From Magallana gigas (Eukaryota), in NCBI RefSeq assembly GCF_963853765.1, contig NC_088855.1, forward strand, positions 13,082,001-13,146,000: DNA of 64,000 nt. The letters run 5' to 3'. Positions 4,501 through 45,000 of this stretch are shown here, piece after piece. Numbering within the stretch: position 1 is the stretch's first letter; each line of letters begins with the position of its first letter. The position numbers were made by a program, and so were the translations under genes. The notes under the pieces are model-generated. The model was not told the origin of the DNA. It worked only from the letters and a program-made list of their open reading frames with translations, and did no database searches.

Positions 4501-5415
4501 ATTGTTAGGGTCATCGGCCACGAATTTACGTATCCTTGAAACTGTGATTTTCACTTTATCCACGAAAATTGATGCCCTTGAAAATTAATGAAACCACAGT
4601 AGACCCTTTATCCACTCGGCTATGGAGTAAGTTACATGTTAAAGTCGATAGAATACTTTTAATATAACGAAATGTCATTTCGATCAGCGGTCAGCCATTT
4701 TGTGATGATGTGTTATTCCACCTTAAATACTGGACGTCATAGAAAACAAGCATATTTTTTAAAATCTCTTTTCGATTGTCAGTTCTAATAGATTGTTGAA
4801 AGCAGTATAAATCCTTTGCTTAACCTTAATGCTTAAGAGCATGTGGGGATGACCTCCTATCGATACCTCTTCAACCCTGCCGAGTGAAATGAGAAGGAGG
4901 ATGGCTTTAATCAGACTGTTTACCTAACAAAGAATTTCAAACTCTCTATAGTAACTCAATTTGTGATTTTAAAACTTTTATGATTTATTACAAATATTCA
5001 TCTATACTATTCCAGCTACATATAGATTCTTAAAATGGAAAGTTTTGAGCTCATATCGTGTCGTTTAGGTTCCTTTAAGTCGATGTTATATTGTAAAAAA
5101 ATGTTATTATGTAGGCATAGTATGTAAAGTCATACAGCATATACCTTTGTGCTTTGATAAATGCATATCTATTTTATTATTGTAACCTGACATACATCAC
5201 ATACAGTGTATGTTAACATGAATCTATTCTAAGGTTCTTGCAAATCAATTTTGCAGATAATAAAAAAATACAACCTTGTTGATGGTTTATACATCCTTCG
5301 ATGTAGTCGCAAATGAAGCCATCGGAGCAGTTACAAAATTGCTGACATAGTACACCATAATTTGGATATATGCAATGCTTTGTACAATTTACACCGTGAA
5401 ATCCAGCTGGACAGT
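1595..5415 (-). CDS. Gene A (5' end not found): type-I membrane protein with at least 3 EGF-like repeats, MEGF10/Draper/SCARF-like, Tyr-rich tail
   Basis: Exons with AG acceptors: 5275-5415 (DCPAGFHGVNCTKHCIYPNYGVLCQQFCNCSDGFICDYIEGC), ~2906-3032 (GCPVGFYGRKCVTSCRYPNYGERCQQRCNCPKEFCDHIEGC; donor uncertain), 2622-2756 (GCPDGFCGSNCSTPCIYPYYGEQCKYRCNCTEELCNHITGC) and terminal exon 1595-1905 with a TM helix (YVIGICISVVLVVVSVSVII-KLRR) and tail ending DAYENTRYNNSF*. No signal-peptide exon identified. Confidence 0.8.
4182..4722. mobile_element. Non-autonomous Kolobok-type DNA transposon (TTAA TSD, 14-bp TIR)
   Basis: TTAA|GGTGGAATAACACA ... TGTGTTATTCCACC|TTAA; TSDs at 4178-4181 and 4723-4726. RR..YY termini with TTAA TSD match the Kolobok pattern. 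No ORF. Confidence 0.75.
4393..4599. mobile_element. MITE with TA TSD nested in the 4182-4722 element
   Basis: TA|CTGTGGTTTCAT ... ATGAAACCACAG|TA; 207 bp, non-coding. Confidence 0.8.
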
Positions 5416-7474
5416 CTAAAATGAAACATAGAAATAAACTATTGTTATTATTTGATCTAACCGTTTTGATTGTAAATTTTCTTTTACTATGTTATACAGG
5501 TGTTTACTTTAATAAAATACATTACAGTTAATATTGCCTTTTAATCATTCCTAGATTCTCATTTAAATGGATACGAGGAATGTAGCTTTGTTAAGGCTGT
5601 CCAAAGCTAAAAATAATATATCGTAAAACTGTACAGTTTTAATTAATGAGAACATACTCTAACCAGACAAATTTCTGTAAATCTTTATTACATAAATTAA
5701 TGCGACATCCAACACTAGACTTCATGCCTTTTTGTCATCTGTTATGTACTTCTTAATCACGTTACGTTCCTATCGTAACACGGCAAATGTTTACAAAAAT
5801 TGCACCTGCGCTTGATATATGACATTTAATCTGAAATATCTTAATGAAAACTCTTTCAAAAGTAATGTATTTTGAAGTTCTTAATGAGAATTAATATCAA
5901 TATTCCGTTTATATTTTTAAATTTCCAAAATAATTCGCGCCACTTTCAAAATAAGACACATTTTCACTTTTTAAGCTCGATTTTTACATAACTGGGTAAA
6001 TTGGTATGTTCCCCCAGCATGAGTCACATCGGTACTTATTTGCTTTTCCAATTTCAAAATATACTAAGATTGTATTGATCGTTCATTGGCGCCAAGCGTT
6101 TTTTACATGCATTAAACTATCTCTCTATTAGTTTACACGTAGCATGGAGAGTCTCCAAACAAGTAGTTAATAGTCAAGAATCGTGAATTCGATAGGGAAG
6201 CCTTTAAATACCCGCGAAATAATTGCATAATATTTTATCTAACATCTTAATTTACCAAGGGAAATTGATAATCGTAAATGCAATTATCGGGATATTTTCC
6301 TGTCGTTGCAATATGACAAACTTTAGTATCTAGTATCTATACATATATTATGCTAATGCTGGTCACTTATTCTAACCACATTGTTACTAAGTTCTTAGAA
6401 GCATTAAACAAACAAAAGTCAAATGCTAGAACATCCGCATATTTGTAAGAAAAATTGATTTATTGTAAGGTCAACAATAGTAACAACAACAGTCTTTAAT
6501 GTGGTCGCAAAACGATCAAATCAAATTGTTAAATTAATCTGTGCTGGCCTTGTACTATCACAACAAAGAGAACCATAGGATTAGTCCCAATAAACACATC
6601 TTATTGAAAAGTTCAAACAAAAAGATATGACATTCTTATTAAATATGAAGCATTTCTTTTGTGCAAAAATGTAAATAGTAAATTCAAAATGCGATGATTG
6701 TGACATCTCTTAAAAATGAAGGATTAAACATCTTATATTTATTTTTAATTGTAATAAGGTCAAAATGAGTGGCATAATTTGAACACTGCTTTCAATTTTA
6801 TTGCTAATTGGAAACATTTTGTACAGGGGTGAGTTGAATACTTTCAAAAGTAATCTTTTAAACTACAATTACTTTGGATTCAAAAAAGTAATACCCCGGT
6901 AGTTACAAGCTGATAACATCAATTTTCAGAAAAAATGTTAAAAATCGATAATTTTCCATCCTGTAATAATGATTACTGGTGATTACTATCGATTACATTA
7001 AATGTCGGTTGGGGTTTTTTCTCGTGTTTTGTTTGTTTATTTTTTATGTTTGTTAAGAAAGAAACAATGTTCTTTGACAGGGGTACTAATTTAATATCAA
7101 GTTATCAATTTTTACAACCTTTTTTCATTTTACTTTATCTAGGTCTAGATCTAGGTTTTATATGAATCTTAGGTCTTATAAGTACTATATATATTTAATG
7201 TGTTTGAGATACTAGTACAAAAAAACACATTTTGTTTTGAACGTATTAAAATTAATTTTAACAGAGAGATATAAAAAATGATAAATCCATGGTGTTATTT
7301 TTACAGTTTCATTTAAAGTTACTATCTATATTTATAGTTCTTTTATGAGACTACATACTTATTGTATTTATTTTAATTATTTTGTACTATGTAACACCAA
7401 TTAACATGTAGAATTTGAAAACGTATAATTATGTATTAACATCGTTATATTTAACGTAACTAAAATACATCATA

Positions 7475-18476: not shown

Positions 18477-20646
18477 AAAAAACGAAATTTGAATATGTGT
18501 CATACATATTAATTTTTCTTAATTAAGTTTATTTGTGTTTATTTTCTTAGTATTCAATATCTAAAAAATGTAAAGATACCTAGTTTTGAACACAAATAAC
18601 CAAACGTTTCATGCGTTGCCTTTGTTGCATGCATTGGATAACCTTAGATCATAGCTGCTTTGAAGTGCCTTAATAGCAATCAACAGTAAACATAAACGGA
18701 ACGCTATTGCACTTTCTTATGACCCTGTCACTAAATACCTAATTTTATGATTTTGACCTATGTACCTGTCTTGATTAACTATTTACTGATAATTCAGAAA
18801 ATTTTGCTTTCCATTCCTATCAAACTAGAACCAGTGCAGCTATATGTCTATAATTTTACAGCTTCGAAATCATCTTTTATACTTGTAACGAATCAAAAGT
18901 CACTTTGTATAGCATTAGATATTCATCAAAATGGCACATAAATTACGATTTTCTAGGTTGTCCGGGTAGTGGTGGTGGTGGTGCTCTCCATTTTTTTCCC
19001 AACCTTTAAAAATATAGAGACAGCTAAATGTAAAAATGTAAACATGTCTAGAATATTGCATATATTTAATTAGATTGAACACTACAATTAAAAGAGACAA
19101 TCTTGCATTTAAGTCAATGAATGCATAAGTCATAAATAAATTGGAATAAATTTGAACAATATTTTTTGTTTAAGATTTAGAATTTAAATATCTTTAATCG
19201 AGAGCAAGAGAGTGCCAAATACTGCGATGTCAATATATTATAAATGATTTGATATTCGATTTAAGCATACATGTATAACTAAGGTTTCTTTTATAATACC
19301 CAGGCGATTTCGTTTGTAAATACAAATTATACAAATTATATAGTCAAAGATTCCTGTGAATACACATACCTTAATATTCCCTTGCCCTGAATCTCATAGT
19401 TATGCGAATTGTGTGACAATTATGAAACTTGGAAAACTAATTAAAACTTTGAATTATTTCCTTTTTTCTGTTAAACATAAATAGTTGTGAGTGCAGATCA
19501 ATGAAAAGTCAAAAATCGGAATAGGAGGGGCAAATACAGAAATATTGCAATAACCCAATGAAATCAACCAATACTCTCAGCTAAATTTGTAACTAGTAAA
19601 TTATCAAAATATGTATTCAACGGTTATTCAATGAGTTCTTCTGAAATGGAAAAAATAATAAATCCGGTTAGCTACTAAGATGGAGAATGCATAAAATCAA
19701 ATGGAAATAATTCATTAAATATCTTAATTATCTTATAAAGACACTTTATGATGACTTCAATTTTATGCATTTTTTTTTCAACTTATGTAGCAATTTTCTT
19801 TCATCACCTACATATGGAGTTTTTGTCTCTAAGTTAATTAGATACTCTAGGGCACGCTCTATGTATGAACAGTTTTAAAGGCGAGGCAAGCTTCTGACAA
19901 ACAAGTTGATAAAACAGGACTGTCAACAGTCTCGATTTCAGTCATCTTTTTGTAAGTTCTATGATCGATACATATGATCTATGATCGACTTTGTCAGCAA
20001 AAACAATATTCAACTAGGTCGCATACTGACTGACGTTTTTAATATTTATTATTAGACCAAAGTTAATCACCTAATTGCCTACGGTTTATTCCGTTTTTCA
20101 TATTTTGACAAATAGCACACAAATAGAAATTTAAATTTTAATTTAGACGTTTTATCTTAAATAACTTACGGAGCATTTTGGGGTACATGTATGTCAATTT
20201 TTGTAACGTGAGGGTAAGGGGGACGTCTTGGTGCTTCTCTCTTCTTTCTAGATTCTAAAAATAAAGAGAAATTCTACAGTTGTGCGTCATATCATAGTGC
20301 AATTCAAGTTGCATTTAAAGTTATACGTACATGTATTTCACAACACCTATTTGTAAATCATTAAATTCTTATGCAACTAAAACCAGATTTGATATTATCA
20401 ATCTAGAGTTTGAATAAGTCGACATTTGTGCTCTGCTAATTAATGTTGATCAAAATGTTATAAAACGTTATAACTATGAAACTGCTTATTCCTCTAATAA
20501 CGTAAATGTACAAGTTATCAATTTCTATATTTTGTGACAATTTCTGAAATGGTAAAGAAGACTGAAAAACAATTTTATATTCACTATCTTTCATTGAGTC
20601 TGTACATATAGCTATTTCTTCTTATCGAAATGTTTGTTTTATTTAC

Positions 20647-23600
20647 CTGAAAGCGTGATATCCTCATCGAATGGATTGCATCCAGAATTTTGATTGTGAA
20701 TTAAAACTTTTATACAGAAGATATTGACAGTTGTTTAGATACATGTATCATGCCAACGCTAATCTTTTTAAACTAGTATCTCTTTCGTCGTTAAATAGCT
20801 AAACATTCAACAACTCATATAATCCTTTGACCGTTTGAGTTAGTTTTGCATGATTTGTAATCATTCTATACCAAGCATCTATCGTGATACATAATTTTAA
20901 GTAAATTAGCAAGAGAGACACGTTGAACGAAAGCAGTCAAGCTTATCCCTTCCCCGTTCAATACTAAACAACAATTCCCTAAGTTTTCTTTCAAATAAAA
21001 ATACGATACGCATTCCTCTCTGTTACATTAATATTGTATAAATATTCATTAGCATTTAAATTTATTTAGACTCTTTGAAACTTATGTAACGTATATTATC
21101 GAAATATGGTTGGTGTAAAATCGAAATTCTTTGAAACAAGTTAACATATTTACCTATATATTTCGCACTAATAAATCGTACAAAAAGGAATTTGACTACA
21201 TTTACATCAACTCTTATGAAAAAAAAATCGTTTAGTTTGTGCATTATCTTTATTTATTTTACACCTCATTTTCTTTAACTTTTGATGGAAATTAAAATTC
21301 CTTGTGGAGGCAAAACATGGATCCCATCTTATCGTTTACTCGTTAAAATAAAAGAGTGCATGGCTACTTTACTTGTCGCTTTTCAATATAGATCAAGCAT
21401 ATTGTAATACAAATTAGAGCAATATCTTTTCATAATTCTAATCTTAAATATCAATTTTGATTTTGCATGTTAAATCAGAATCGTTTGTTTGCGTTTTTTT
21501 TATCGTTATCGTTCGTGTATCGTGAAAATGTAGTAAGTTAGTGGTCGTCCGTGTATCCTGCGTAAACATTCGTGTATCATGCATGATCGTTTGTGTATCA
21601 GAATCGTGTGTGTCGTTTGTCACCAATAACGTTACTACCACTGTGTCAACATAATACACAATTTCATTATCTGCCTATTGTCTAATTGCCAAAATATTCT
21701 GTTAATCAAAATAAAATTGTGTTAACCTGAAGGTGGGGTGTCTTCCTCGAATGGATTGTTTCCAGAAATTGGTTTTAAATTAGTTGAATCATTAGGAGCA
21801 GGGTCTTTTTCGGACGTTGCTGAAAAACATTTATATACATAATTTTTTATATTTATTGCACCTAAAAAACAACGAAATCAAAATAATGTGAAAAATAAAC
21901 AAATATTTTGAATATAATTTTGGTATTCTAATTAATGAAAAAAAAATTCACATCAACTCAGGTAAAAACTATAAATTTATTCGATTTCAAACAATAAAAA
22001 TTAATCAACTATCCCTCAAATTCATATCATATTTTTTTAACCTGAAGGCGTGGAGTCTTCATCAAATGGATTGATTGCAGATATCGGTTTTGAAGCACAA
22101 CTATCAGGAGCAGGATTGTCATTTGACAAATCTGAAACACAAATATAATAATTTATATATATTTTATTGCAATTGGAAAATGAAATATCTTTATCATATC
22201 ATTTTTGTGTTTTCTAATTTGTGAAAAAGAATAATTAACCCGTAAATAAGTTAAAATACATAATTTCAATATCCGATAGTGATCTTTTAATCCTTAAACT
22301 ATCAAATCAAAACTAAATGTTAACCTGAAACCGTGGTGTCTTCATCAAATGGATTGTTTTCAGACATTGGTTTAGAAGAACTATCATTACCAGGAGCAGG
22401 ATTGTCGGTTGATAATGTTGAAACAGGAGCATCACCTAATGCAGGAACGTCTTTTGGTGTTGATTTTGCAGCAGCTTGGTATTGTGCAATGGGTTTGGGA
22501 ACATCTGTCCCATTTTGAGATAGTTGATCAGAAGAACTAGCACTATTATCCAGTGCTTTTGAACCAGAAGTATTTTTCATACTTGTTGGTATTGCTTTTG
22601 TGTCATCTATAACAACTTTTTTCGTATCCTCCTTAGTACTTTCAAACGGAGACACACTGATCGACGATGTGTGCGATGCTGAAAATAGATCAGCAGCAGC
22701 TTTGTCATTCGATACTTGTTGTGAATCAGGAGCCTCAAGTGATGTGGATTCGGATGCAATGTTCTCATTCGATACTGGTTTTAAACTACGGCCATTATTT
22801 GATTTGGGTGGATCTAAACAAATGATATAAAAAAGTTAAACTTAACACATCATTTAATTTTTAAGTTATCTAAACAGGTCTTAGCGTGATATTTTCAATC
22901 ACTCGAATTAAAAATAAAAAATGACGCAAACGCAGAAGTCAACACAAAACTCTACAATTTAAAACTATCAATAAAAGCTAAGGAAAATACGATATGCCTT
23001 TCGGAATCGTAATAATTTTTTTTTAAATTTTCTTTTTCTCTCCATTGCCAATAAGATATTTGTTTTAAAAACACCAAGCCTGTATAAACGTGTATGACTA
23101 ACAACCGAGATTTCTTTCCGGACCCATTTTAATGGATAAAACAAATTAAAAGTCCTTTGTAATGATTGAGTTTTGGATTAATGGATCCGTATTTTTATAA
23201 ATTTTCTATCGTTTGATCAATCAATCGATCCCTACAAAAATTGTGAACCTTACAATGCTTACAATGACAAAATGGTAAGGAAAAAGATAACAATAAAACT
23301 TTATCCTTGTAATACATTTTGCCAAATTGTGTTCCTTAGAAAGGGTCTTTGAATTTTTTCGTTTCAGATATCATGTCATCAAGGTTTGTTTCATACAAAC
23401 GTAAGTTTTCATAAATCTATTTAGTGCACGTGACAAAGTAATGACTCCAAATAAAAATTATGATTATACAGTGATGTATGTCACAATGTTTAAATTATGC
23501 GAAATATTATTAGAATGTTTAGCAACACTTAAATGTCGTTTGGTTGTGATATTCGAAGTGCAAAAAACCCCCAAAATAGTCAATAAAACTGATTCCTAGA

Positions 23601-26600
23601 AAACGTTAAAAACAGTAGAAAATTTACGCACTACCCCTTCTATTTAAACCAATTACTATAAATATTAAATATTAGCACTTATTTTCTACCATAGAAAATA
23701 GGTACCTTTATTTCACCAGAAAATATTTGAATTACTGTATGCAAAACAAAAAATGAAGTCGGTTTGAAGCCCCCCTTTCAACCTTTTGAGATCGGGTTCG
23801 TCCTTTCAAATCATCACTCTGAGATTCAACATCTAGAAAAAGGTGGGCAGTGTATTTTCCAAAAAATTAAGCTCGTTTTCTGCATCTGTCAAAATCCCAC
23901 CTTCCCTTCCCTGACAGTCATATTCTTCCTTTTTCTACTGTTGTGTTCTTTATGTATTTCAGGTCATTAATGGGAACGAAGATGTTCAATTTTGTGAATT
24001 TTAAAAAGTTCATTATTCGTCGTGGCATATACCCGTGTATCGTTTGTGCGCACCAAATCAACTGATGCCTATGTATTGTTGTGCTGACTTGTTGAAAAAC
24101 ATTGTGACAATTAATTTGTGCATGTGAAGTTGAGTTGCTGAACTGTTGAACCTGTGAATTGTGTAAAATTGTACTTGTTTTATTATATCATTTTTATTAA
24201 ACAATAATTCAACATAAATTGTATAAAATAAGTTTAAGTACTTTAATATATGACCATCCGCGGTAAACCCGGGGTGGTCAATTTCAAACTATAATATTGA
24301 TGACATGTTGATTGTTGATGAATATTTGTTGTGACTTTTGTTTGAGTGGGTTTTCCCAGAGTTGTCAATGTCATCCCACATTTCATTTATGTCATGGCCA
24401 ATACTCGCCAAATAAATCTTTAAAAATAATATTTTTGGTAACTTTTCTCTGTGTTAATAAAACAATATAATTAATAGTTGTAGAAAGTATCCATTGACTA
24501 TTTTGGGACAATTAAATAAGATCACTCAAATGCTTAGCAAAATCGTACAAATTAAACGTGATGTAAAAGTGAAAATTAAGTTAACCGAAAACAAAATATA
24601 TGCAAATGATATTTTTCAAAATTACTTTATTTTTTAATTTGATTTAAAATACGTAAAATGGCAGTATTGGTATAATCGTCCAAGTGTTTTAAAAAAGCAT
24701 AATCTTATATAACAACTTACTTTCTTTGAATTTCTTTTCATTTGCGTCTTGACCAGGAATTGAAATCTCCGTAGGCTCATTCTCGGGCTTTGAAGGTTTC
24801 GAGGTATTCTTCGCATCTGACTTTATTTGTTGCAAAGAAACGTCAGCTGGCTTTGGTTTTGATAGGCTGTGGTCATCTGACTTTGCTTTCATAATACCTT
24901 CAGTATCTGAGTTGGAAGTTGAATTAAGAAAAGTATTCGACTTTTGTGTGGAAGCAGTCTCATTATCTGGCTTTGGTTTTGAAGAAGCGTCATCCACTGG
25001 CTCTTGTTTTGAAGCAGTAATAATATCTGAAGTTTGTCCTGAAGTACGAACATTGTCGGAAATGCTTGTAATAATATCTTTATCTGAGTTCAGTTTTTCC
25101 AGATCATCATTAACTCTTGGTGTTGAAGATAGAACTTCAGAAGACGGGGAATGAGTAACATTATTAGATATGGTTGCTGAAGCAAGAGCAATACCTATTA
25201 CCGGCATTGCATTGGACGAAGAGTTTGACACGACAGCGAAATCTGAAAAAATATTTGTCTTTTAATTAATTGCACCTTGCTTGAATTTTCAAAATATATC
25301 TGTAGTTAACTGTCACTGTAATAAGATGTCTTATTGAAATCAGAAATAAAACAAACTTTATCGTCAAGTTCCGAACAAACGTCAAATTCAGACACTGCCA
25401 CAAAACTATGGTTTCTTAAATATTGTTTTAACGATAACATACATTTTATATAAACTTTGAAACAGATTCATGAGCAGGTTGCCACATAATAATGACAACT
25501 TTGAGGCAAGCGGACACATGGCATGTACTTTGAATTTATGTAAACATACCTTCAAAAATGACAATATTGATACATGTATAAGACAACATTTCCACATGAA
25601 ATAAGGAATTTAATCATATATTCCTTTTTTCAACTTAAAAAAAAATATATTTGTCTGTTATTACCAAATGCGTACTTCTACATGTAATATTGTTTCATAA
25701 ATTTGAAAGCCTTGTTTATTTGAATATATATTAATGATAAGTTTATTTTTTGATAAAAAGAATGAAAAATTATTATGCATAGAAATTTAACAATTGTGTT
25801 ATCTATTTCATTTACACATCATATTCCAAATAAAGAAAAAAAACTTAATTGTAAGGAAAATCATGTACAAATATCTTATCACAATTTTATATGCTTTATC
25901 AACATGATACACAATTTCATTGTTTGCCTTTTGTCTAAAATCTCCAGAATATCATGTAAATCAAAATGAACTTTTGTTTACCTGAAGGTGGGATATTTTC
26001 CTCGAATGGATTGTTTCTAGAAGTTGATTCCAAACTAGTGGAATCTTTACGAGCAGGGTCTTTATCCGACGTTGCTGAAACACGTTTATCTAAAAAAATA
26101 TATATATATATATATATTGCACTTAAGGTCAGACGACACGTTCCTCAATTTTATATAACTTTTTCAAGGAATTTGTTGATGGTTATACACTGGTTACCTT
26201 CTTGATCTGGAGCAGTTTCTTTTGAAAGCAAAGGTTCTTTAACTAAAAACAAAATCAAGTAATGAAGTTAATTAAAGATTCCGTAGGCCTTTATTATCCA
26301 TAAATTCTCAACAATGAATTATCAAACACAGTATCAATTCATTCACCATAAAAACGTACGTATCATTCCATAAAATAAGGTCCCCATGAACAATTAAGCA
26401 ATTGACAATCAACGAAAACTAATCCATAAAATTGAGTACACTACGTATTTTTGGCAAACCTTCATTTTCTTCATCTACATGTACATCTTCATTTGTATTT
26501 TTTTCCATTTCTGCTTTATCATTAGGACCAGTTTCCACATCACAAGTCAGCACTATAAAGTAGTATTCATATACACATACTGGTAACAAATACTTGCAAT

Positions 26601-29600
26601 GATATCGAATTAAACGAATTAATTGATAGGTGTGATCGTATTTAACTCACATGCATCCTCAAAATTCTCGGTCGCATAATTTTTTTTAAGTTAATTAAGC
26701 TTTACTGTTAAAGCATTTGAAAAAAAAACTTTCATGCATAAAGCTTTGATATAGTAGTATAGTTAGATTCTTTGGCCTAATTTCCGTGGATTTCGTGGGC
26801 CATTATTATCCACAAATTCTCGCCGTCAACGAATTATTAAACACAGTATCAATAATAAAAATGTACATATCATTCCATAAAAAAGGTCCCAATGAACGAT
26901 TAAGCAATTGACAATCAACAAAACTAATCCATAAAATTGAGTACAATATGTATTTTTTTACAAACATTGCTCTTCATGTCGTGCATTTTCATTTTCTGTT
27001 CCATCATCGGGACCAGTTTCCACATCACAAGTCAGCACTGTAAAGTAGTATTCATATACACATACTGGTAACAAATACTTGCAATTTCATGACCATTGGA
27101 TTGATGAGTAACAGTACTGCTTCGTTTCGGAAGAATCTGATACAACTCAATTAACTTTATACAAGAAGTAGTATTTAATGTTTGAATATAATGAATACCT
27201 TTACGAAATCTTTCGAGAATGGGAGAGTCCCTCTTATAAAACAAAATGAAGAACACAATTACACCAGCCAGAGCCAAAGCAAGTATCACAAGGAAAGCCG
27301 TTTTGATGTAATCATCGGTGTCATTTCTGAAAAAAAGCATGTTATTCTTTATACATAATGAACAAAATTAAGAAATTAAGTAAACTCTAATCCTATACAA
27401 AATATGCATGCTATTATACCTTGTTCTATTTTGAAGAAAGTTTTGGCGAGTCTAATCAAATACTGTAAATTCCTTTTATTACGCGAGTACTTAATTCCGC
27501 GATCCCGCTGGTCTGTATCAAATCGCGAGAATAAAAAATCGCGAACGTTCAAATTTTCTCCTTTTTTCTTATAGTTTTCAACTCTCAGAAAATAATGGCG
27601 AGATTTTAAAATCCGCGAGGGATGCCTCTCGCGATTTTACGCAGATATTTATTCCTCGCGTTTAATTAGGAATTTACAGTATAGCTATTAAAAAAAGATC
27701 ATATTAAAATATTTTAATAAGATATTTAATAAGGAAAAAAGTTAGGAGTTTATTTGTCTTTAATTAAGAAATATTTCTTTATTTGCACATAATAATGGCG
27801 TGAGAATAACGAATGATTGTCTTACAAATGAATACCTAGTACGAGCAAAAAAAACTGTGCGCATCAGAATGTACATTCATAAAATACATTTTTGTAAAAG
27901 ATTCTAATTTTGTTTGTAGCAACAATCTTTAGATTAAGAATAAAATGCTTAAAATAGAGAAATCAATACCATTTAGGTTCTGAGACATAGGTATTGGCAA
28001 CAGATAACTCAAGGCAATTGATGTTTTTGTTTGATTCTTAAATACACATGTACATCTACTTTACTTGTAAAAGTGATATCAAAGTAACAATGTGATATTA
28101 TCTGCCGAAGATTACAGGACTAAAATGTATTTGCCGGCATTATGTAATACTGATTCTGATAGGAATTTATAAATTCCTAAAATCTAACCCAGATATTTTT
28201 CAGGTTTTTTTTTAATTCAAACTGTTTAAATTTGAATTTCATGAAATGATATTTATTGAACTTGAGTAAGAGTATTACAATTAAGTTTCACTTATGTTTT
28301 TATCAACATTCTTTCAAAAAATGTACATACCTCAAGTCCTTCTTGGTCACTATTGGTGCTGTTTCCGATTGGGATGATGGTGATGGTGATGGTGATGTAC
28401 AAACCGGACAAGCAGTTTGTGTCGGTTTTTGATATTTTAGTTTGTAACATCTTTGATCTAAAAGAACAAAAATGATTAGTAACTAGTAATTAGTAAAGAG
28501 TATTAGATTTTTATTTTTGACGGAGAGACCCTGCCAAGAGGTAATAAAACTAGGAGTAACAAATTTTACACTTGAAAACAATACGTTTTGTTTCTTCCCG
28601 CTGTGCTGTTTGTTTGCTTCATTGAAGTTAAGGGTTAAATAAGAAAATTCTGCTTCCAATATGCTTCTATTATTAGATCAATGAACTTCACCCTGGCACT
28701 GGAAATTCTTGGAAACCCTTATCATTATATTCTCCCTCACTACGTTCGTCCGAATATAAAACATTAAAGTGCTAAATGAATAAAAATAACAGATATTACA
28801 TAGATACGCTGCTCGCTAGCGTTATTTTATTTACACAAAAACACATATTAAACAACCACCTGTCAACCCAAAATCAACATTTTCCATATCATCTGCCATT
28901 TTAACTTAAATCGCAACTAGCGAGCGACCTTAGAGTGCCAAGCCACCTCATGGTCCTACTATTTATATTACCTTATCACATGACCCGAAACCCATTCGAG
29001 TACGTATGAAAACCCATCACGCACATTATTTTAATAATCATTCACACAGTCTGAGTCGAGATGTGAGAAAATTATAGTTTAAGCACGATCGGATTGCAGT
29101 ATATTCTCCTAATAAAAGCCAGAGTTCCGCCAACATCATTTATAACCTTTCCCATAGACTTAATTGATTTCTTAACTTTAGTGAATGCTCTTTAGGCCAA
29201 AAAAATATTTGTGTTCCGGTTTCCCGACCTACCATATTTTAATGCGCCGACCTTATGACACTTTTTATTCCAAATGCAAATTACCAACCGCAATTGGTTT
29301 AAACAATAGAGTCTAAAAAACGCTTGTAACAATTCAATAGAAAACACCACAATCATATCAAAGCGTTTTAAAGATTTTTTTGTGCAGTTTGACAGCACGA
29401 ATGAAAGTAATCCTGGGGTTCTTTAGCTATATTGTTATAGATGAGATTGAACAAAGAGCAAATGAATGTAAAATATATCCGAACTCTTTTGAAAATGACT
29501 GAATATTACTAGTATATATTTACATTCAATTAATATTAATTTTTCTATTCTATTTCTTAAGACAACCGATCTTAATTAATATCTCTCTAGAAACTGACAG

Positions 29601-31777
29601 GGCTGAAAACTACGCGTCAAGTTCAATAAGTCATTTGATCGATCAAGACTTTCAGCAGCATACAACAAATCCCGGACTGCACGAAATGACGCCAGATTCG
29701 CTATTTCTCCTATCTTAGGTTAGGTTGTACATAAATAGTATTTTAGTTTCTTTTACATTCTCTTTATGATAAATTCAATAATGAAGTATATAAATGTATA
29801 CGTACATGCATAAACATCAAAATGTATTACTTTGATGATCTGCACTGGCTATTTAGGTGGCAACCAATGCAGAATGAACTTACATATGTCTCGTTATTGG
29901 ATTATGTATTTTTTTCAATGTTCGCTACCTTTATTCCATCGTTAATCACTAAAGAAAGCTTTTCAATGTTGAGGTATATTTACATTTATATGCGTCGGTG
30001 GATGGGTATCTAGTTGGACATTTCTCCCTTCCATCAAATTTCAGGCATTCAAATCCATTCTCATAATTTTCCTCAACTCGCTTTTTGTCACTGCTGTATC
30101 TAGCACAATATCCTGAAACAAAAATTAAAAGATACATTATATATTGCAACTGTAACCTTGTAATTTACGATGAGAAACAAAAAATATTTAATAGTGGAAA
30201 AAATACAAAAATTATACTAATGTAGGTATACCAATATGCCTAAAAAACATCAGGATTTCACGTAGTTAATAAATTGACTTGAAAATTGATATAAATAGAC
30301 AATTGACCTCTTACATACATACCCCCCCCCCCTCCAAAAGGATGCCATTATTTAAAAGCTAACTGATCAAGTTTTTTCAAGTTCGTTAAGATGAAAGCTT
30401 TAAATAACTCTTTGTTATCCAAGTTTCCGGCAACATAAAGACCTGTGCTGTCAATATACAACCGAGCCCAGGCATAAGCCGAGGCTGTTTTATTTCATAC
30501 AACATTTCGAGACCGAGGAGACTATCATGCAACAGTCACGATAACTTGTGCTTTATTTCTACGCAACTCAAAGCTTTTATATTTCCTCTTATTTTTTTAA
30601 AGAGAGATGAACTAGGTCATTTTGAGTGCTGTTCCGTCTAACCCCAAAAGTTTCATAATAAAGATATATGTACACAGGCTACCGGTCAGATAGATATGCA
30701 GACGACCTACATATAATATTTTCTTTAAAACTGAATACACCTCTCTTATGAATAAAAGTTTTGGATCAAATTTCTTTCAATGAAAACAGTTATTAATACT
30801 ATTTTATTTCATATAAGAATAAGCAAATCTGTTAGGGAGGTCCTTGACAAATCCGCATTAAGATCTTTGAAATAAGCATCGTTTTGACTGGAGCTACTTT
30901 CATTATCGTTGCTAGAAAAATTGGAATTTCTTATCAGATAATCTGTTGGTGAAGGTATATTGATGAATAATGTCTGCGGCATCTCACTGATTATGTGACG
31001 TAAAGCATTCCAACAAGAATAATTTCTGCTTTTTTCAGCTCTTGCATGTACATGTAGTTTGAATTCACCCCTTGGAACATTAATGATGTTTTAAAGAGTA
31101 CTCTTATTACGTTACGATCTTTAGTTTACATCTACTACCTACCAGCAATCTACATTTCGAGTTTAATTACCTGAAGCCTGTAACTCGAAGTCTAATATAT
31201 AAATAGTGCCCGTTTGGGAGGGTAACAGTTGAAATTGACACCCCGAGAAAACCATTGTCAACCGACGCGAAGCAAATTAAGAAAGATTTACTGCTTTTAT
31301 ATAGGAATAACGTGAATTCTACAGCGAACTGTACGCGCATAATTTTCGCGCATATGTATGTAACAATTTGTAATGTTACCCGTTGCCAAGTGCGTTGGTA
31401 ACGCTGAGGGTAATAGAACGGATTATGAACTGCGTCTTCACCAATCAGATTGCAGTATTTAACATGAAAGTATAACAACATTGTTTATCTAACCCTTTAA
31501 ATACTAATAACTCACTAGATGCACAAAAAAAAGAAAGAAAAAAACCACGCACGCTCTCCAAAATAATTTTTCCCAAATATACAATGATAATGAAACCCGA
31601 AACTGTCCCTTGCTACCAAAGGAAGGGTTTGACCGAATTATAACACAGAAAAAATGAAATATCTTACAATGCCTCCTACTTTTTAGATTAAAATGATGTA
31701 GAGGCCACGATCTTGTTCAAAAACATTAATAAACTTTTTAACATGTATCACATAACATGTGGTTGATTATCATCCCA

Positions 31778-31841
<64 letters not shown>

Positions 31842-32245
31842 ACCTTGCAAATAGAAAATTGGTGCACAAATCTCCAGTGTCATGGTTTGCCGTTGATTTT
31901 CCAAGCAATGATATTGAAAGTTTTCTGGTTCTGTGCATTTTTGTAAACCTGCCAAGCTGTCGCAGTTTTTTCGCCTTGCAGCAATATTCCATTCTGTTTT
32001 GTTTTTTGGACAAGATTCAACGTACGAAATGGTTGGTATCGACTCATTGCAACCGTACAACCCTTCGCAAATCTGCGTTTAAAAAAGCTCTAAAAATTAT
32101 ATATTCTTAAAATGTCAAGTCAGTAATTCATGTTCTGTAAATTAATTTGAACAAATAGGCACTTTGTAGAAGTTTATTTTATCTTACTGTACATTACCTG
32201 TATGTAAACAGCAAAACTTAATATGAAATAGATGAAGGTATCCAT
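20647..32245 (-). CDS. Gene B (3' end not found): type-I membrane protein, uncharacterised bivalve Cys-rich ectodomain, long acidic Ser/Thr tail with repeated NPF motifs
   Basis: Phase-consistent exons: 32198-32245 (signal-like MDTFIYFILSFAVYIQ), 31844-32072 (..SCPKNKTEWNIAARRKNC..YHC..EICAP..), 29984-30112, 28331-28457, 27199-27326 (TM), then phase 1-1 exons 26966-27037, 26460-26552, 26198-26242, 25982-26074, 24721-25242, 22325-22813, 22042-22131, 21727-21819 and ~20647-20709 (weak acceptor). Stop exon not identified. Confidence 0.75.
26290..27090. repeat. ~510-bp intron+exon tandem duplication inside gene B
   Basis: 26290-26600 and 26801-27090 share intron text (aaacacagtatcaat..tcattccataaaa..ttaagcaattgacaatcaac) and exon start LTCDVETGP. 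Confidence 0.8.
27463..27679. mobile_element. MITE with TA TSD in a gene B intron
   Basis: TA|CTGTAAATTCCT ... AGGAATTTACAG|TA; internal TCGCGA-rich sequence. Confidence 0.8.
31194..31478. mobile_element. Palindromic (Crypton-like) element family, half-palindrome copy
   Basis: Reverse-orientation match to 58012-58349 (tataaatagtgcc.gtttgggagggtaacagttgaaattgacacccc..; aacggattat.aactgcgtc..ccaatcag). Confidence 0.65.
31781..31840. repeat. (GA)n microsatellite, ~30 units
   Basis: Pure GA run immediately next to the splice donor of gene B exon 2. Confidence 0.95.
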
Positions 32246-33004
32246 ATTTCCTGGATCAATCTTGTAAACAACGAATATTTGGTAAAAAACACACTGTGAA
32301 CAAAATACATGTAGAAGGCATTATATATTTTATTGTAGAATAACTATCAGCTCGAAAAATAAGCTGAAACCTAATAATTTGTAATAAAAAAAATAAGAAT
32401 AATAATAATAAAATTCAAACAATGAAAAAAGCTGATTTCAGAGGATCGTTTGAAGTCGCTTAACTTAACTATTTCTATCTTTAAAATGGCATACATTTAT
32501 AAAACACATTAAAAAATATCATGTTTTGTGATATCTCGAAAGATTCCATAAATAATGGTTTTTTTTTAATTTAATCAACGATATCTTAAATTTAATGAGT
32601 GCAAACAATTACATAACAGTCCTAACTTAAAGTGGTAATGAGTTGTTGTAATTCTGTGTTCATCGATTAAAAAACAAACACGTGATCAAAGAACAGATTA
32701 ACAGGAACTACCAGAAATAGGTCGTTAGCAATCCTTCCGCAATGAGTTATACATAATTCAAAATGGATTTGGAGTATGTATGTGTATTTATTTTTGCCAC
32801 GAGATTCATATACGGTAAATACTTTGACATTTAGATTCTCTTTTTATTATTTTTTTTCATTAAATGGATATATATTTTATGCCGTAGCCAAAATCTACAA
32901 TAGAGGTTTTTTTCAACGTCAGGTAAATCAAAATGCTTAAACTGATACAATGTACAATGTAAATATCATTATGACAGGCATGACTCTCTTTTTAGTGTTA
33001 ACAG

Positions 33005-33369
33005 AATGTCAAGTTGGTTATCATGGTTTAAATTGTTCAGAACCCTGCAGACATCCTAACTATGGAATTTTATGTCAACATATCTGCAATTGCACAGATG
33101 AATTGTGTAACCACAGCACAGGGTGTTTTCAGCAGGTTGAGGGTAAAACAATCGTTTCATTGTCTGAACATCTAATTTCTCTTGTTTAAATATGCATATG
33201 TAAATTAAATTTATTTCAGATATATGTATATGTTATTATTTTTAAATGCATTTAATTAGCCTAAGGACGTAAATCCAATAGTACGCTTTTCCTTATCAAC
33301 TGAGTCACGTTATATACTGCATTAGTTATAAGTATAATTATGGACTTTGCTTATCTGTTCCGTTAAAGG

Positions 33370-33445
<76 letters not shown>

Positions 33446-34207
33446 ATAAGTTTTATATTTTTGTTTTAGAATGTATAGATGGATACTACGGGAAGAACTG
33501 TGTTTCTCCGTGTAGATACCCGAACTATGGACAAAGATGTCAATTTAAATGCAACTGTAACATTACAAATTGTAATCACAAAACAGGATGCAAAAGAGGT
33601 AAATCTATTGTACCAAAGTCTGGCGATAAGTTATTGATGATGAATTGGAATTAAAAAAGTGTTTTAATGATATCGAACTAAACGAATTGATTGATAGACG
33701 TGATCGTATTACCTCACATGCATCCTCAAAATTTTCGGTCGCATCATCAATTTTACCATAAATCACTATTCTTCAAATTCTATGTTTAGTTAGACAGTTC
33801 AAAAGAATAGCGAAGGTGTGTAAAGGCAATAGCGTAATTAAATGTTTCAAAATGTTAATACTATATTTCATGTTTCGATAAAATATCTTATTTATATTAC
33901 ATCCTCAGATAACACTACGAAAAGAGTTGATTCAACAGACCTCTTTCAAAAGCACCTTGTAATTTTTATTATTGGCGGATCAGTATTGTTATTATTTATA
34001 GTGATAGTATCATGTGCAGTGTGTATTAAACTGATTAGAAAATGCAGAGCAAAAAAGAGGGAATGGGAAGGTAACTTTGATTCTGAATTTAGTTCCTTTT
34101 CGTATCACGACGATGCTAACACTAGGGATCCATCTGTCAGGTATTGTGATAACATGGAAGTCCGGAACAACAACAAGTTTGAAATATACGAAAATACAGT
34201 TTTTTAA
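33005..34207 (+). CDS. Gene C (5' end uncertain): type-I membrane protein with 2 EGF-like repeats, paralogue of gene A
   Basis: Phase 1-1 exons 33005-33142 (ECQVGYHGLNCSEPCRHPNYGILCQHICNCTDELCNHSTGC) and 33470-33598 (ECIDGYYGKNCVSPCRYPNYGQRCQFKCNCNITNCNHKTGC); terminal exon 33909-34207 with TM (LVIFIIGGSVLLLFIVIVSCAVCI-KLIRK) and tail ending EIYENTVF*. Confidence 0.8.
33376..33441. repeat. (TA)n microsatellite
   Basis: Pure AT run in a gene C intron. Confidence 0.95.
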
Positions 34208-42029: not shown

Positions 42030-45000
42030 ATGGAAACCGTTCTACAAATAATAGTTTATATCACATTCATAATTATCCAGGTAAAATACTTTTTCATGTG
42101 TGTGATTTTTAACAAATAAATTTTCTCCTACAATTTGTACGTGTATATTTTTTTTCATTAAAAAAAAAAAGAAGGGAGAAAACGTACGTAAAGAATGATT
42201 TTCATTTTAGATAGCAGATTGTTCGTTCATCTGTCCACTCTCAACACCAACTATAGAATACGTCACTTCCTGTCCACACAATAAAACAGAATGGGAAAAA
42301 GCAGTTCAACGGAAAAACTGTGAAAGTATGGCGCATCATCAAAACTGTACGGAGCCTAAGAACTTTCAATATCATTGTCTCATAAATCATTTGCGAAACG
42401 CAACATTAGAAGTTTGTGCACCAATTTACTATTTGCAAGGTAAAATTTTATTTTTTCTCAACCATATTTTGTTATTGTAAAGTCACAACTCTCAATAATG
42501 GCGTTCAAACTCTTTACTCAATATGATCACGTGACAAGATGCTTACATCACAGATAACCATTTGATACAGACTGTCGCTTATGTCAATAAACAAATTATA
42601 ATGCAATAACATAACAGTTTTGATTTTGGTAAAACGTGAATGTGTTTATAAAATGTATGTATACATATTCTTCTGTTCTTACTTTTGAAAATGTACGCAA
42701 AAAGAAAGAACAAACCCGTATGAAAAAATAGAATTGTTGTAGATTGCAATTATAACCAAAAAAAGGCATTTTTTAGATTTTAGAAACAAAAGTTAATATA
42801 GAGTTTTAAAGTTTCTACGCGACTTAAGGAAACGACAAAAACAAAACTTCTTCAAATTTACACATTCTATTTCACAATGTTTTTAGGCTACTGTGCGTAT
42901 TATAACACAAATAATAAAGAAATTATGGAGAATTATGACCAAGGATTCGAGTGTTTGAAGTTTCCTGCCGGCGAACGATGTCCACCAAGATACCCATCAT
43001 CTGAAGCATATAAATGTAAATTTTCCTAAATAGATATTTGAGGCATAAAGATGTAATGTTTTCTAATATGTCCTCTTAAGATTATCAGCTTCATGATGCC
43101 TATGATTTGGACTGAGTCTAATGATTTCTAAGTGAATACACATGCAATGTTAGTTATTAGCTCGGATGAAGCATATAAAAGTAAATATTTTTTTCTGCTT
43201 GAAATTATAAATGGATATAATATTTTAGGCATTTAATGTAATAATAAATGTCTTTATATTTCTCCAATATTCTTACCGATGCATTTGCCTCACTTTTATC
43301 ATATTGTATTGTAATTTGAATAGACATACGTTGTTATGTTCCCAAAAACCAACCAAAACCAACAACAACATTACCTATAGCGTCTTCGGCAAATAAAGCT
43401 CCTGAATTAAGGTAAAACAATAATACACCGCGTTATGTATATATCATTATAAAGGATGTGCTTTATTCATAATAAGAATTGACATTAAACTACATTCTTT
43501 TTCAGCTCAGAGGTGGTTTACATTATATTCATTACCATATTATCAGTGGGATTGGTTGCCGTTTCTTCACTCTTTTTATGGTGGGAGAGAAAGTCAATAA
43601 TTAGCTTATGTGAAAAAGGTAGATTTTGAAATTATATTATGTGCTTAATATACTAAGTTTTAATAAAACTGTTGACAAACCATTATTCAAGAATACAGGT
43701 TAACTTTTTGTAATCTTTTTTTCTAGGATGTAAACCCAAGGACTTAAGCAATCTAGAGAATAACACTCCAGAGGAAACAGGTTTATTTTGTAGTTTATTT
43801 GAACTCAAATGTGTTTTTTCTTTTGATGCACCATTGTACTTTTACTTTTAAGAATATGTTTTTTATTTTAAACATGGTCAGCCAATTGACCAAGATGCTA
43901 CATTTCAAACAATAAAAGAATAAAGTATAAGAACACAGCGTTGATAGGCAAAATGAAAAACAAAAAACATATCTTAACGTAGATAAGTCATGTACAAGTA
44001 AATAAATATTTTAAAGTATAAAATCATGCATGATTTGTACATGTCAGTTGGCATCACGTACGTTTGTAAACTTGTATGAAACATACATACTTAATTTAAA
44101 TTATGCATGTATTTGACAAAACATTTTCACATTTTTTTCTATATGCTATGGTGGCATAATTATGCCAAACTTATCAGATTGTCAAATCTTTAACTGTCTT
44201 GTTATATATATGATTATTAGTTATTGTGTTTAAAAAATTAAAACTTCAACTGGTACATACCCAATATCTGACATCTAGATATCACTATATTTTTCTGACG
44301 AGCGGACAACGGTTGGTTTTAAAAGCGTAAAAAATGATTTTCTTGCTAGTATAATAATCTTCTGACAAGTCAAAATTACGATCTTTCAACTATCATAGTT
44401 GCTAATTATATATATAGTGGCAGAGCTTGCCACCATAAAATGCATTATTCTAGTATACTTCCAAAGTTGTTTGTCAGTTATCAAAAGTAAAAATCTTCTA
44501 TACTTTAACTATAAAGTATTAGAAGAAAAAGTGTATAATGTGTAATGCATAGTGGTGTGAGCTTTGATAGTGGATTAGGAATATAGTTCCAATTTTAAGG
44601 ACAGCCAATTTGAAAAATTGAATCAGCTTGGTTAAATGCTATGTTGTGGTTCTGTTAAAAGGGTTTTTGTTTCAGTTTTAAAGTTTATATTTTTCACTGA
44701 ACGTATAACTGAAAAGGATATTACTGTAACATTTTCTGTCCCACAGATTTTTTTTGCAAGAATTTAATGTTTTTTTTTAAATTTAGAATATTTAATATCA
44801 AAATTTTCACCAACTAAGCGTTATTTAATATCAATAACAGTAAAAGAAGGGTTCATTAATCATTTCGTATTGATATACCTAGTAATTAATCATTTCGTAT
44901 TGATATACCTAGTAAATTTCTTTTGTGATATTGTGTTATTTTGACATGTATTTATGTTGAAATGTAATTTTATTTTAAGGGTTTCTTCCACCCGAAAGCA

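What the first reader, a model, noticed from the sequence alone, without database searches (positions are those of the whole stretch)
20647..26074. Receptor tail built from exon cassettes that each end in an NPF-acidic motif
Seen: downstream of the gene B TM helix, five phase 1-1 exons end in near-identical motifs: NNPFEENIPPSG (25982-26074), NNPFDEDTTVSG (22325-22813), INPFDEDSTPSG (22042-22131), NNPFEEDTPPSG (21727-21819) and CNPFDEDITLSG (~20647-20709). The motif is conserved while the rest of each exon has diverged. Known: NPF binds EH domains, and NPF followed by acidic residues is the preferred ligand of the C-terminal EH domain of EHD proteins (e.g. MICAL-L1, rabenosyn-5), which are usually cytosolic adaptors. 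Inferred: a membrane receptor that recruits EHD recycling machinery directly and multivalently, with valency tunable by skipping symmetric exons.
Basis: partly seen in the sequence, partly recalled or inferred. Interest (0 to 1): 0.7.

Follow-up and report, generated by a model that had tools for sequence, protein, structure and literature searches.

The report
Oyster membrane protein with NPF-repeat tail
An oyster gene for a single-pass membrane protein carries four to five duplicated small exons that each end in the same NPF-plus-acidic peptide, the known docking signal for EH-domain trafficking proteins; the exons are real and spliced, but binding remains untested.

Summary
Five minus-strand cassettes each end in NPF-[DE]-E-[DN]-x3-S-G followed by a GT donor. 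The matching DNA pattern occurs five times in the 564-Mb genome, all in this gene.

RNA contigs from three studies show canonical in-frame splicing: Ea' - Ea - 45-nt exon - NPF1 - 522-nt exon - NPF2 - NPF3 - NPF4 - terminal exon. Two boundaries need correcting. NPF1 starts at 26089, not 26074, and NPF5 starts at 20706. NPF5 is skipped in two assemblies and included in one.

Exon phases and paralogue comparison give a type I protein: signal peptide, mollusc-specific Cys-rich ectodomain, stalk, one TM helix and a roughly 560-residue acidic, disordered tail. This 5' half has no RNA support here.

The motif's 18 nt are 86% identical between copies, against 57-60% for the rest. Related oysters keep up to three cassettes; others have lost NPF.

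The genome encodes one EHD whose EH domain closely matches human EHD1's. EH or EHD docking is therefore the best reading, but it is inferred. Tunable valency is supported only for the weak fifth exon.

Verdict: a new variant of a known kind, of moderate interest.

The parts
32198..32245 (-). Predicted first coding exon: ATG plus a 16-residue hydrophobic signal peptide, phase-0 GT donor
   Evidence: Sequence reading.
31844..32072 (-). Ectodomain exon 1 (76 codons, 7 Cys), member of a large mollusc-specific family
   Evidence: 58% identical to the paralogue at window 42223-42465 (+). At least 131 matches in the genome. No Pfam hit. The Atlas names it only 'hypothetical protein, Mollusca'.
29984..30112 (-). 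Ectodomain exon 2 (phase 1-1, 4 Cys)
   Evidence: 51% identical to the paralogue exon at 42850-43026. Boundaries read.
28331..28457 (-). Ectodomain exon 3 / Ser-Pro stalk (phase 1 to 2), needed to link exon 2 to the TM exon
   Evidence: Top-scoring of only two candidates in a search constrained by phase and open frame; the other is a 10-nt fragment. It begins YQRC-, like the equivalent exons of two paralogues. Direct splicing of exon 2 to the TM exon would create TAA.
27199..27326 (-). Transmembrane exon: NDT sequon, 22-residue helix, then YKRDSPILERFRK (positive inside)
   Evidence: Only TM-like segment on this strand in the 30000-26900 stretch scanned. Unique in the genome. A loose end in X5 joined to exon Ea aligns to 27201-27230 at 83%.
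26966..27037 (-). Exon Ea' (72 nt, phase 1-1), the shortened copy made by a ~505-bp tandem duplication; optional
   Evidence: Loose ends of X5 and X9 at 26552 map exactly to 26966-26995. Duplication shown (D5, D10, D12-17). X5 also has contigs that skip it.
26460..26552 (-). Exon Ea (93 nt, phase 1-1), acidic
   Evidence: Piece 26460-26552 and joint 26242/26460 in X1, X5 and X9.
26198..26242 (-). 45-nt exon (phase 1-1), KEPLLSKETAPDQE
   Evidence: Joint 26242/26460 in three runs. AG and GT read. It accounts for 45 of the 51 unplaced letters of X9 record 18.
25982..26089 (-). NPF cassette 1 (108 nt, phase 1-1), ends NNPFEENIPPS|G
   Evidence: Joint 25242/25982 in X1, X5 and X9. The piece reaches 26083, where the tool masks a repeat. 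Acceptor at 26091-26090.
24721..25242 (-). 522-nt exon without NPF (phase 1-1), with SKPKP-type remnants of repeats
   Evidence: Joints 25242/25982 and 22813/24721 in X1, X5 and X9. Sequence read.
22325..22813 (-). 489-nt exon whose 3' end is NPF cassette 2, ends NNPFDEDTTVS|G
   Evidence: Joints in three runs. Unique in the genome. 22 related clusters in other oysters. AF2 mean pLDDT 53, no secondary structure.
22042..22131 (-). NPF cassette 3 (90 nt, phase 1-1), ends INPFDEDSTPS|G
   Evidence: Joints 22131/22325 and 21819/22042 in X5 and X9. X1 shows the same junction with allelic differences.
21727..21819 (-). NPF cassette 4 (93 nt, phase 1-1), ends NNPFEEDTPPS|G; closest copy of cassette 1 (81% over 173 nt including intron flanks)
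   Evidence: Joint 21819/22042. Loose ends of X1 and X9 at 21727 map exactly to 20225-20254. Repeat family D1.
20647..20706 (-). NPF cassette 5 (60 nt, phase 1-1), weak acceptor, ends CNPFDEDITLS|G; alternative or species-dependent exon
   Evidence: Included in an X5 contig (pieces 20695-20647, then a diverged terminal exon). Skipped in X1 and X9.
20169..20254 (-). Terminal coding exon: basic cluster, YPHV (YxxPhi-type), stop TAA 20171-20169
   Evidence: Acceptor at 20254 fixed by the exact mapping of RNA loose ends. Reading. Motif scan.

Best explanation
This is an expressed, oyster-lineage gene for a type I single-pass membrane protein. It has a short signal peptide, a ~160-residue Cys-rich ectodomain of an unnamed, greatly expanded mollusc family, a Ser/Pro stalk and one TM helix. 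The cytosolic tail is about 560 residues long, acidic and intrinsically disordered.

The tail was built by tandem duplication of symmetric (phase 1-1) exons. Four constitutive cassettes and one weak fifth cassette each end in the short linear motif NPF-[DE]-E-[DN].

The most likely mechanism is that each motif is a docking site for an EH domain. The acidic residues at +1 to +3 favour the basic, C-terminal EH domain of the oyster's single EHD/RME-1 orthologue. EHD proteins work as oligomers, so four or five sites on one flexible tail would bind by avidity. That would couple the protein, or the membrane it sits in, to EHD-dependent endosomal recycling or tubule fission.

Shown: the motifs, their selective conservation, the splicing of the tail exons, the uniqueness of the cassette in the genome, and the presence of a conserved EHD EH domain.

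Inferred: the 5' half of the gene model, the cytosolic topology, and all binding.
For: - Motifs and splice sites.
- Uniqueness: 5 of 5 genome-wide pattern hits lie in this gene, control 0.
- Splicing: canonical in-frame junctions in RNA contigs of three studies.
- Selective conservation: motif bases 0.86 identical against 0.56-0.60 elsewhere, with the differences mostly at third codon positions.
- Conservation across species: orthologous loci of other oysters, alignable through the introns at 70-86%, keep NPF in 12 of 21 clusters at cassette 2, and two contigs keep three consecutive NPF cassettes.
- Disorder: 81% disorder-promoting residues, net charge -38, AF2 pLDDT 53 with no secondary structure.
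- Topology: signal peptide, Cys-rich exons homologous to paralogues, stalk exon in the required phases, KR-rich flank after the helix.
- Partner: one EHD gene, EH domain E=2e-46 to human EHD1 EH (PDB 2KFF/2KSP) with the GKIWK stretch intact.
- Literature: EHD EH domains prefer NPF followed by acidic residues, as in MICAL-L1 NPFEEEEED, Rabenosyn-5 and Rab11-FIP2 (PMC13282721 section 8.2). [quoted passage not shown]
Against: - No binding evidence of any kind; the in-silico complex test gave no verdict.
- Eight of 21 related clusters have lost NPF at cassette 2, often together with E to K (DKD). One related contig has lost it in three consecutive cassettes. The motifs are therefore dispensable in some lineages.
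- The signal-ectodomain-TM part has no RNA support here. The only TM-to-tail junction seen is a diverged contig end, 83% identical to the window's TM exon.
- EH domains of Eps15/intersectin type also bind NPF, so EHD selectivity is a preference rather than a rule.
- The purine-rich acidic codons could also serve as splicing enhancers.
- The raw-read polyA run sampled (about 1% read) showed almost no expression.
Confidence: 0.5

Rival explanations
1. The NPF motifs are read by the N-terminal-type EH domains of Eps15, intersectin or REPS at the plasma membrane. They then act as a multivalent internalisation signal that enters clathrin pits directly, not as an EHD recycling signal.
For: The genome has at least four further EH-domain exon hits besides EHD. 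NPF is the core ligand of all class I EH domains (PMC3570524). The terminal exon also carries a YxxPhi-type YPHV that would fit an endocytic cargo.
Against: The invariant acidic +1 to +3 context is the feature reported to favour EHD over Eps15 EH2 (PMC13282721 section 8.2). In the nematode screen none of the interactors found for any EH protein had an acidic consensus around NPF (PMC3570524 discussion).
Confidence: 0.2
2. The conserved block is kept for a reason other than EH binding. It could be another motif reader, such as acidic-cluster/CK2-type sorting (D/E plus Ser/Thr) or a mollusc-specific partner. It could also be an exonic splicing enhancer that small exons with weak GTTAA donors need.
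For: GAKGARGAC is purine-rich and lies 13 nt from the donor. The donors are non-consensus (GTTAAC/GTTAAA). A second conserved block ([DN]PAP ... SKP[IM]S) upstream of each NPF has no known reader.
Against: The AAT-CCA-TTY part is not purine-rich, yet it is the most conserved. Differences between copies are mostly at third positions (TTC/TTT, GAA/GAG) or conservative D/E swaps, as expected for selection on the peptide. Lineages that lost F or P kept the exon and its splice sites.
Confidence: 0.15
3. The motifs have no function. The cassettes resemble each other only because they are recent duplicates, perhaps homogenised by gene conversion, in a fast-evolving lineage-specific gene that is decaying in several oysters.
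For: Cassettes 1 and 4 share 81% identity including intron flanks. NPF is lost in 8 of 21 related clusters, and one relative has lost three in a row. The closest relative's contig lacks recognisable downstream cassettes.
Against: An 18-nt island of 86% identity inside exons and introns that are only 56-60% identical is not what neutral decay or tract-wise conversion produces. NPF-acidic is kept in positionally orthologous cassettes of species whose introns have diverged to 70-80%. The gene is spliced and expressed.
Confidence: 0.1

Closest known systems
Cytosolic multi-NPF partners of EHD proteins (MICAL-L1, Rabenosyn-5, Rab11-FIP2, EHBP1, syndapins; C. elegans AMPH-1)
   Same: [quoted passage not shown] This is the documented ligand type of the C-terminal EH domain of EHD/RME-1 (PMC13282721 section 8.2; PMC3570524).
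   Different: Those are peripheral adaptors recruited by Rabs, lipids or BAR domains. Here the motifs sit on the tail of an integral type I membrane protein with an ectodomain. There is no sequence homology, and each motif is carried by its own duplicated exon.
SCAMPs (secretory carrier membrane proteins)
   Same: Integral membrane proteins that display NPF repeats to the cytosol and bind EH-domain proteins in an NPF-dependent way (SCAMP1 with gamma-synergin, cited in PMC3570524).
   Different: SCAMPs have four TM helices and N-terminal NPF repeats, are conserved across eukaryotes, and their NPFs are not followed by an acidic run. The oyster protein has one TM helix, C-terminal motifs and no Pfam match.
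Yeast NPFX(1,2)D endocytic signals read by Sla1p SHD1 (PMC2199253)
   Same: An NPF-based signal placed directly on the cytoplasmic tail of membrane cargo. Four of the five oyster motifs formally fit NPFxxD.
   Different: The reader domain SHD1 was not found in the oyster genome. Cassette 1 (NPFEEN) does not fit. That system is fungal.
Paralogous mollusc Cys-rich single-pass proteins (for example window 42223-43500 on the + strand, and clusters on contigs C9, C1 and C8)
   Same: Same exon plan: signal, two Cys-rich exons, a stalk exon in phase 1 to 2, and a TM exon with a phase-2 acceptor. Identity is 37-58% in ectodomain exon 1 among hits better than E=1e-10.
   Different: No other copy in the genome carries the NPF cassette or the large tail exons.

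Membership tests
EH-domain ligand, EHD-selective subclass (NPF followed by acidic residues) | Asn-Pro-Phe tripeptide | tested here: met
   Five NPF in one reading frame and strand. About 0.08 expected from tail composition.
EH-domain ligand, EHD-selective subclass (NPF followed by acidic residues) | Acidic residues at positions +1 to +3 after NPF | tested here: met
   DED in three cassettes, EED in one, EEN in one. The criterion is from PMC13282721 section 8.2.
EH-domain ligand, EHD-selective subclass (NPF followed by acidic residues) | Motif lies in an accessible, disordered, cytosolic segment | tested here: inconclusive
   Disorder is supported: composition and AF2 pLDDT 53. The cytosolic side is inferred from the signal peptide, ectodomain exons and positive-inside flank. 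No experimental topology, and no RNA for the 5' exons.
EH-domain ligand, EHD-selective subclass (NPF followed by acidic residues) | A cognate EHD with a basic EH domain exists in the same organism | tested here: met
   One EHD locus (G000 C6:22294698-22295384). Its EH domain matches human EHD1 EH (2KFF/2KSP) at E=2e-46, with GKIWK conserved.
EH-domain ligand, EHD-selective subclass (NPF followed by acidic residues) | NPF-dependent physical binding to the EH domain | not testable with these tools
   Needs pull-down, ITC or NMR with NPF-to-APA controls. The one complex prediction returned no verdict.
SCAMP family | Four TM helices, SCAMP domain, N-terminal NPF repeats | tested here: not met
   No Pfam SCAMP hit on any exon tested. 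One TM-like segment in the stretch scanned. The motifs are C-terminal to it.
Yeast-type NPFX(1,2)D / Sla1 SHD1 signal | Presence of an SHD1 reader domain in the organism | tested here: not met
   PF03983 gave no match in the genome. Caveat: the search is exon by exon.
Unnamed mollusc Cys-rich single-pass family | Homologous ectodomain exons and shared exon-phase plan | tested here: met
   At least 131 genomic matches, best paralogue 58%. Shared stalk-exon start YQRC/YIRC and phase-2 TM acceptor.

The most novel reading that the evidence does not exclude
A cargo-type membrane protein that engages oligomeric EHD directly and multivalently through its own tail, bypassing the usual Rab-effector adaptors. 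Its number of working NPF sites changes quickly between oyster lineages: four to five here, three in one relative, none in another. It changes partly through an optional exon. That would amount to a natural valency series for EH-NPF avidity.
Probability: 0.2. Interest if true: 0.6.

Novelty: new variant of a known kind. Interest (0 to 1): 0.4.

Why it matters
EHD/RME-1 proteins are normally brought to membranes by cytosolic NPF adaptors. It is unclear whether a membrane protein can recruit them by itself, or how many weak EH-NPF contacts that would take.

This gene offers a compact, natural test case. It has identical motifs on separate symmetric exons. One of them is optional. Sister lineages have lost the motifs.

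The locus also shows how exon duplication writes short linear motifs into a disordered tail within a hugely expanded, unstudied mollusc receptor family.

If binding fails, it is simply a fast-evolving lineage-specific tail of limited general interest.

Tried and rejected
- **Complex prediction** of the oyster EHD EH domain (L024, residues 118-219) with cassette 4. It returned 'no answer' (score 0.33, mark 0.34). It is reported here only and is not used as evidence either way.
- **Exhaustive profile search** with the NPF2 exon. It found only three clusters, all single-exon ORFs from genomic contigs. No annotated full-length protein came out, so no independent gene model was obtained.
- **Word-index protein search**. 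It gave 22 Logan fragments but no spliced product.
- **Joined spliced protein.** All searches were exon by exon and by reference.
- **Pfam** on ten exon translations gave nothing meaningful.
- **ESM Atlas** on ectodomain exon 1 gave only 'hypothetical protein, Mollusca'.
- **Direct splicing of ectodomain exon 2 to the TM exon** was considered and rejected. It creates TAA in this gene and in two paralogues. A stalk exon in phase 1 to 2 resolves it.
- **An N-terminally anchored protein** starting at the ATG 14 nt upstream of the TM acceptor was considered. It cannot be excluded without 5' RNA data, but it would give the same tail topology.
- **Sla1/SHD1-type reading** was rejected because no SHD1 domain was found.
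- **Raw-read run X22** gave almost no coverage, so exon inclusion could not be quantified.
- **Two scripts** printed too much or timed out. Their useful lines were re-derived.


Full report
**Setting.** The RNA runs that hold the region are labelled oyster. The assembly is 564 Mb in 29 contigs, and the window is C3:13082001-13146000. The gene lies on the minus strand.

**Observation.** Six-frame translation finds 15 NPF tripeptides in the window. Five of them share one strand and lie within 5.4 kb, and only these five are followed by [DE]-E-[DN]-x3-S-G. Each is followed by TCAG|GT, and each exon is preceded by a pyrimidine tract and AG. The degenerate DNA pattern for N-P-F-[DE]-E-[DN]-x3-S-G plus the donor occurs exactly five times in the whole genome, all here, with none in the reversed control. 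From the tail's residue frequencies, about 0.08 NPF would be expected.

I aligned the five cassettes with their flanks. The 18 motif bases are 86% identical on average. The rest of the exon is 60% identical and the intron flanks 56-57%. Differences inside the motif are mostly TTC/TTT, GAA/GAG and D/E swaps.

**Splicing.** I laid contigs of three RNA runs from three studies, plus one raw-read run, on 20601-26600. Canonical GT..AG joints were found for:
- Ea (26460) to a 45-nt exon (26242);
- NPF1 (25982) to the 522-nt exon (25242);
- that exon (24721) to NPF2 (22813);
- NPF2 (22325) to NPF3 (22131);
- NPF3 (22042) to NPF4 (21819).

One 1161-nt contig (X9) runs Ea' - Ea - 45-nt exon - NPF1 - big exon - NPF2. 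Another runs NPF2 - NPF3 - NPF4 and beyond.

The loose ends were informative. In X1 and X9 the sequence after NPF4 maps exactly to 20225-20254. So NPF4 is spliced to a terminal exon (20254-20169, stop TAA) and NPF5 is skipped. In X5, which carries a different organism label, NPF4 is followed by 20695-20647 (NPF5) and then by a diverged version of the terminal exon. Upstream of Ea, X5 and X9 contigs continue exactly into 26966-26995. This is exon Ea', the shortened copy from a ~505-bp tandem duplication. Two other X5 contigs continue into a sequence that aligns over its full 30 nt to 27201-27230, the 3' end of the TM exon, at 83%. No better match exists elsewhere in the genome.

The contig piece runs without mismatch to 26083, where the tool masks an AT repeat. 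The 51 unplaced letters equal the 45-nt exon plus 6 nt.

Every tail exon from Ea' to NPF5 is a multiple of 3 nt and phase 1-1.

The raw-read run was almost empty here, so inclusion levels could not be measured. Contigs drop rare isoforms.

**Gene model upstream.** This part is inferred and has no RNA evidence here. The exon at 27326-27199 holds the only TM-like segment on this strand in the 30000-26900 stretch scanned. It has an NDT sequon before the helix and YKRDSPILERFRK after it. Further upstream lie a 16-residue signal-peptide exon with ATG and a GT donor and two Cys-rich exons. These two are 51-59% identical to a paralogue on the + strand of the window and to many other loci.

Splicing ectodomain exon 2 (phase 1, last base T) directly to the TM exon (first bases AA) would create TAA, both here and in paralogues. 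I therefore searched the intervening intron for open exons in phase 1 to 2 with good splice sites. Only two candidates emerged. One is a 10-nt fragment. The other is 28457-28331, which encodes YQRCY... followed by a Ser/Pro-rich stalk. The equivalent exons of two paralogues begin YQRC and YIRCY and use the same phases.

The protein is thus a type I membrane protein with about 160 extracellular residues and a tail of about 560 residues. The ectodomain family has no Pfam model. The ESM Atlas knows it only as 'hypothetical protein, Mollusca'.

The TM exon, the NPF2 exon and the cassette pattern are each unique in the genome. The tail is therefore an innovation of this one family member.

All searches were exon by exon and by reference.

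**Nature of the tail.** Across the ten tail exons (542 in-frame residues), 81% are disorder-promoting residues. Ser is 15.5%, net charge is -38, and there are only about ten Phe, five of them in NPF. AlphaFold2 with a 22-sequence alignment gives mean pLDDT 53, pTM 0.09 and no secondary structure for the NPF2 exon. Besides NPF, each cassette keeps [DN]PAP and SKP[IM]S upstream. The terminal exon has a basic cluster and a YxxPhi-type YPHV.

**Relatives.** The exhaustive and word-index protein searches with the NPF2 exon found only single-exon ORFs from genomic contigs of other oysters, 63-82% identical over the aligned part. Their contigs align with the window through the introns at 70-86%, so they are orthologous loci.

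At cassette 2 the counts are:
- 12 of 21 clusters keep NPF-D-E-[DN];
- one has DPF;
- eight have lost it (NRF, NTF, NKF, NPV, IPL, NPL), five of them together with DED to DKD.

Two contigs (L035, L036) keep three consecutive cassettes. These read NNPFDED or NDPFDED, then NNPFGED or NNPFDED, then YNPFEED. One contig (L031) has lost all three (NKF, YPF, NSV) and seems to lack the NPF1 exon. Another lineage (L032-34) has the end of an NPF1-type cassette.

The array therefore predates the split of these oysters. It is maintained in some lineages and decays in others.

**Mechanism.** NPF is the core ligand of EH domains. The C-terminal EH domain of EHD proteins has a strongly basic surface and prefers NPF followed by acidic residues, as in MICAL-L1 NPFEEEEED, Rabenosyn-5 and Rab11-FIP2 (PMC13282721 section 8.2). 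The nematode EH-network paper states the same preference for RME-1. [quoted passage not shown]

The oyster genome has one EHD locus. Its last exon encodes the helical-domain end and a complete EH domain. That domain matches the human EHD1 EH domain at E=2e-46, with the LGKIWKLAD stretch intact. The human domain was solved alone and with NPF peptides (PDB 2KFF, 2KFG, 2KFH, 2KSP).

All five oyster motifs have acidic +1 and +2, and four also have D at +3. The best-supported reading is that the tail is a multivalent EH ligand tuned to EHD. I give this about 0.5.

The main rival is binding to Eps15/intersectin-type EH domains as an internalisation signal (0.2). Non-EH explanations follow (0.15), and then no function (0.1). 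A fungal Sla1-type reading is unlikely because no SHD1 domain was found.

**Tunable valency.** Symmetric phases make skipping possible for every tail exon. The data show variation only for Ea', which has no NPF, and for NPF5. NPF5 has a weak acceptor and its inclusion was seen only under another organism label. NPF1-4 were included in every contig.

**Comparison and novelty.** Functionally, the closest known systems are the cytosolic multi-NPF-acidic EHD partners. Among membrane proteins, the closest are the SCAMPs and the yeast NPFxD cargoes. The oyster protein is homologous to none of them, and the membership features of SCAMP and Sla1-type signals were tested and not met. I did not find a described single-pass membrane protein with an exon-encoded array of NPF-acidic motifs in two literature searches, though these are not exhaustive.

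I rate it a new variant of a known kind (NPF arrays as EH ligands). Interest is moderate at 0.4: the anatomy is clean and testable, but the function is untested and the gene is lineage-restricted.

Noticed in passing
window 26277-26600 and 26789-27085: A ~505-bp tandem duplication (87-95% identity) made two copies of an acidic exon. The upstream copy (Ea') has an internal deletion but is still spliced in as a 72-nt phase 1-1 exon.
   Followed up: yes
window ~26122-26184 (intron between the 45-nt exon and NPF1): End fragment of a young, high-copy interspersed repeat: 806 first-look candidates in the genome, 40 scored at 94-100% identity. It explains RNA word-depths of 400-950 and the many loose ends at 26177/26184. 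The element was not identified.
   Followed up: partly
window 42223-43500 (+); G000 contigs C9, C1, C8: The Cys-rich ectodomain belongs to a greatly expanded, unnamed mollusc family with at least 131 exon matches, many in tandem clusters on C9. The shared plan is signal, two Cys exons, a stalk exon (phase 1 to 2) and a TM exon.
   Followed up: partly
window 22325-22813 against alignment A1: The window's NPF2 exon lacks a ~17-19-residue segment (consensus PAESPQSL-FDKSSLSK) that all 21 related clusters carry. This is a lineage-specific in-frame deletion.
   Followed up: no
window 22320-22325, 22037-22042, 21722-21727, 20639-20647: Reading through the donors of NPF2-4 gives GGT TAA, and NPF5 gives GGT AAA TAA. 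Intron retention after any of these cassettes would end the protein just after the motif's S-G. Low-depth unspliced contigs exist around NPF5.
   Followed up: no
window 31780-31842: A (CT)n microsatellite of about 60 bp starts 2-3 nt after the donor of ectodomain exon 1.
   Followed up: no
window 32941-34204 (+) and 1598-5491 (-): Exons for EGF-like Cys repeats followed by TM exons, resembling MEGF-type receptors, flank the gene on both sides.
   Followed up: no
window 25150-25215: The 522-nt exon begins with a mildly hydrophobic stretch (MPVIGIALASATI). It is too short for a TM helix, and its role is unknown.
   Followed up: no
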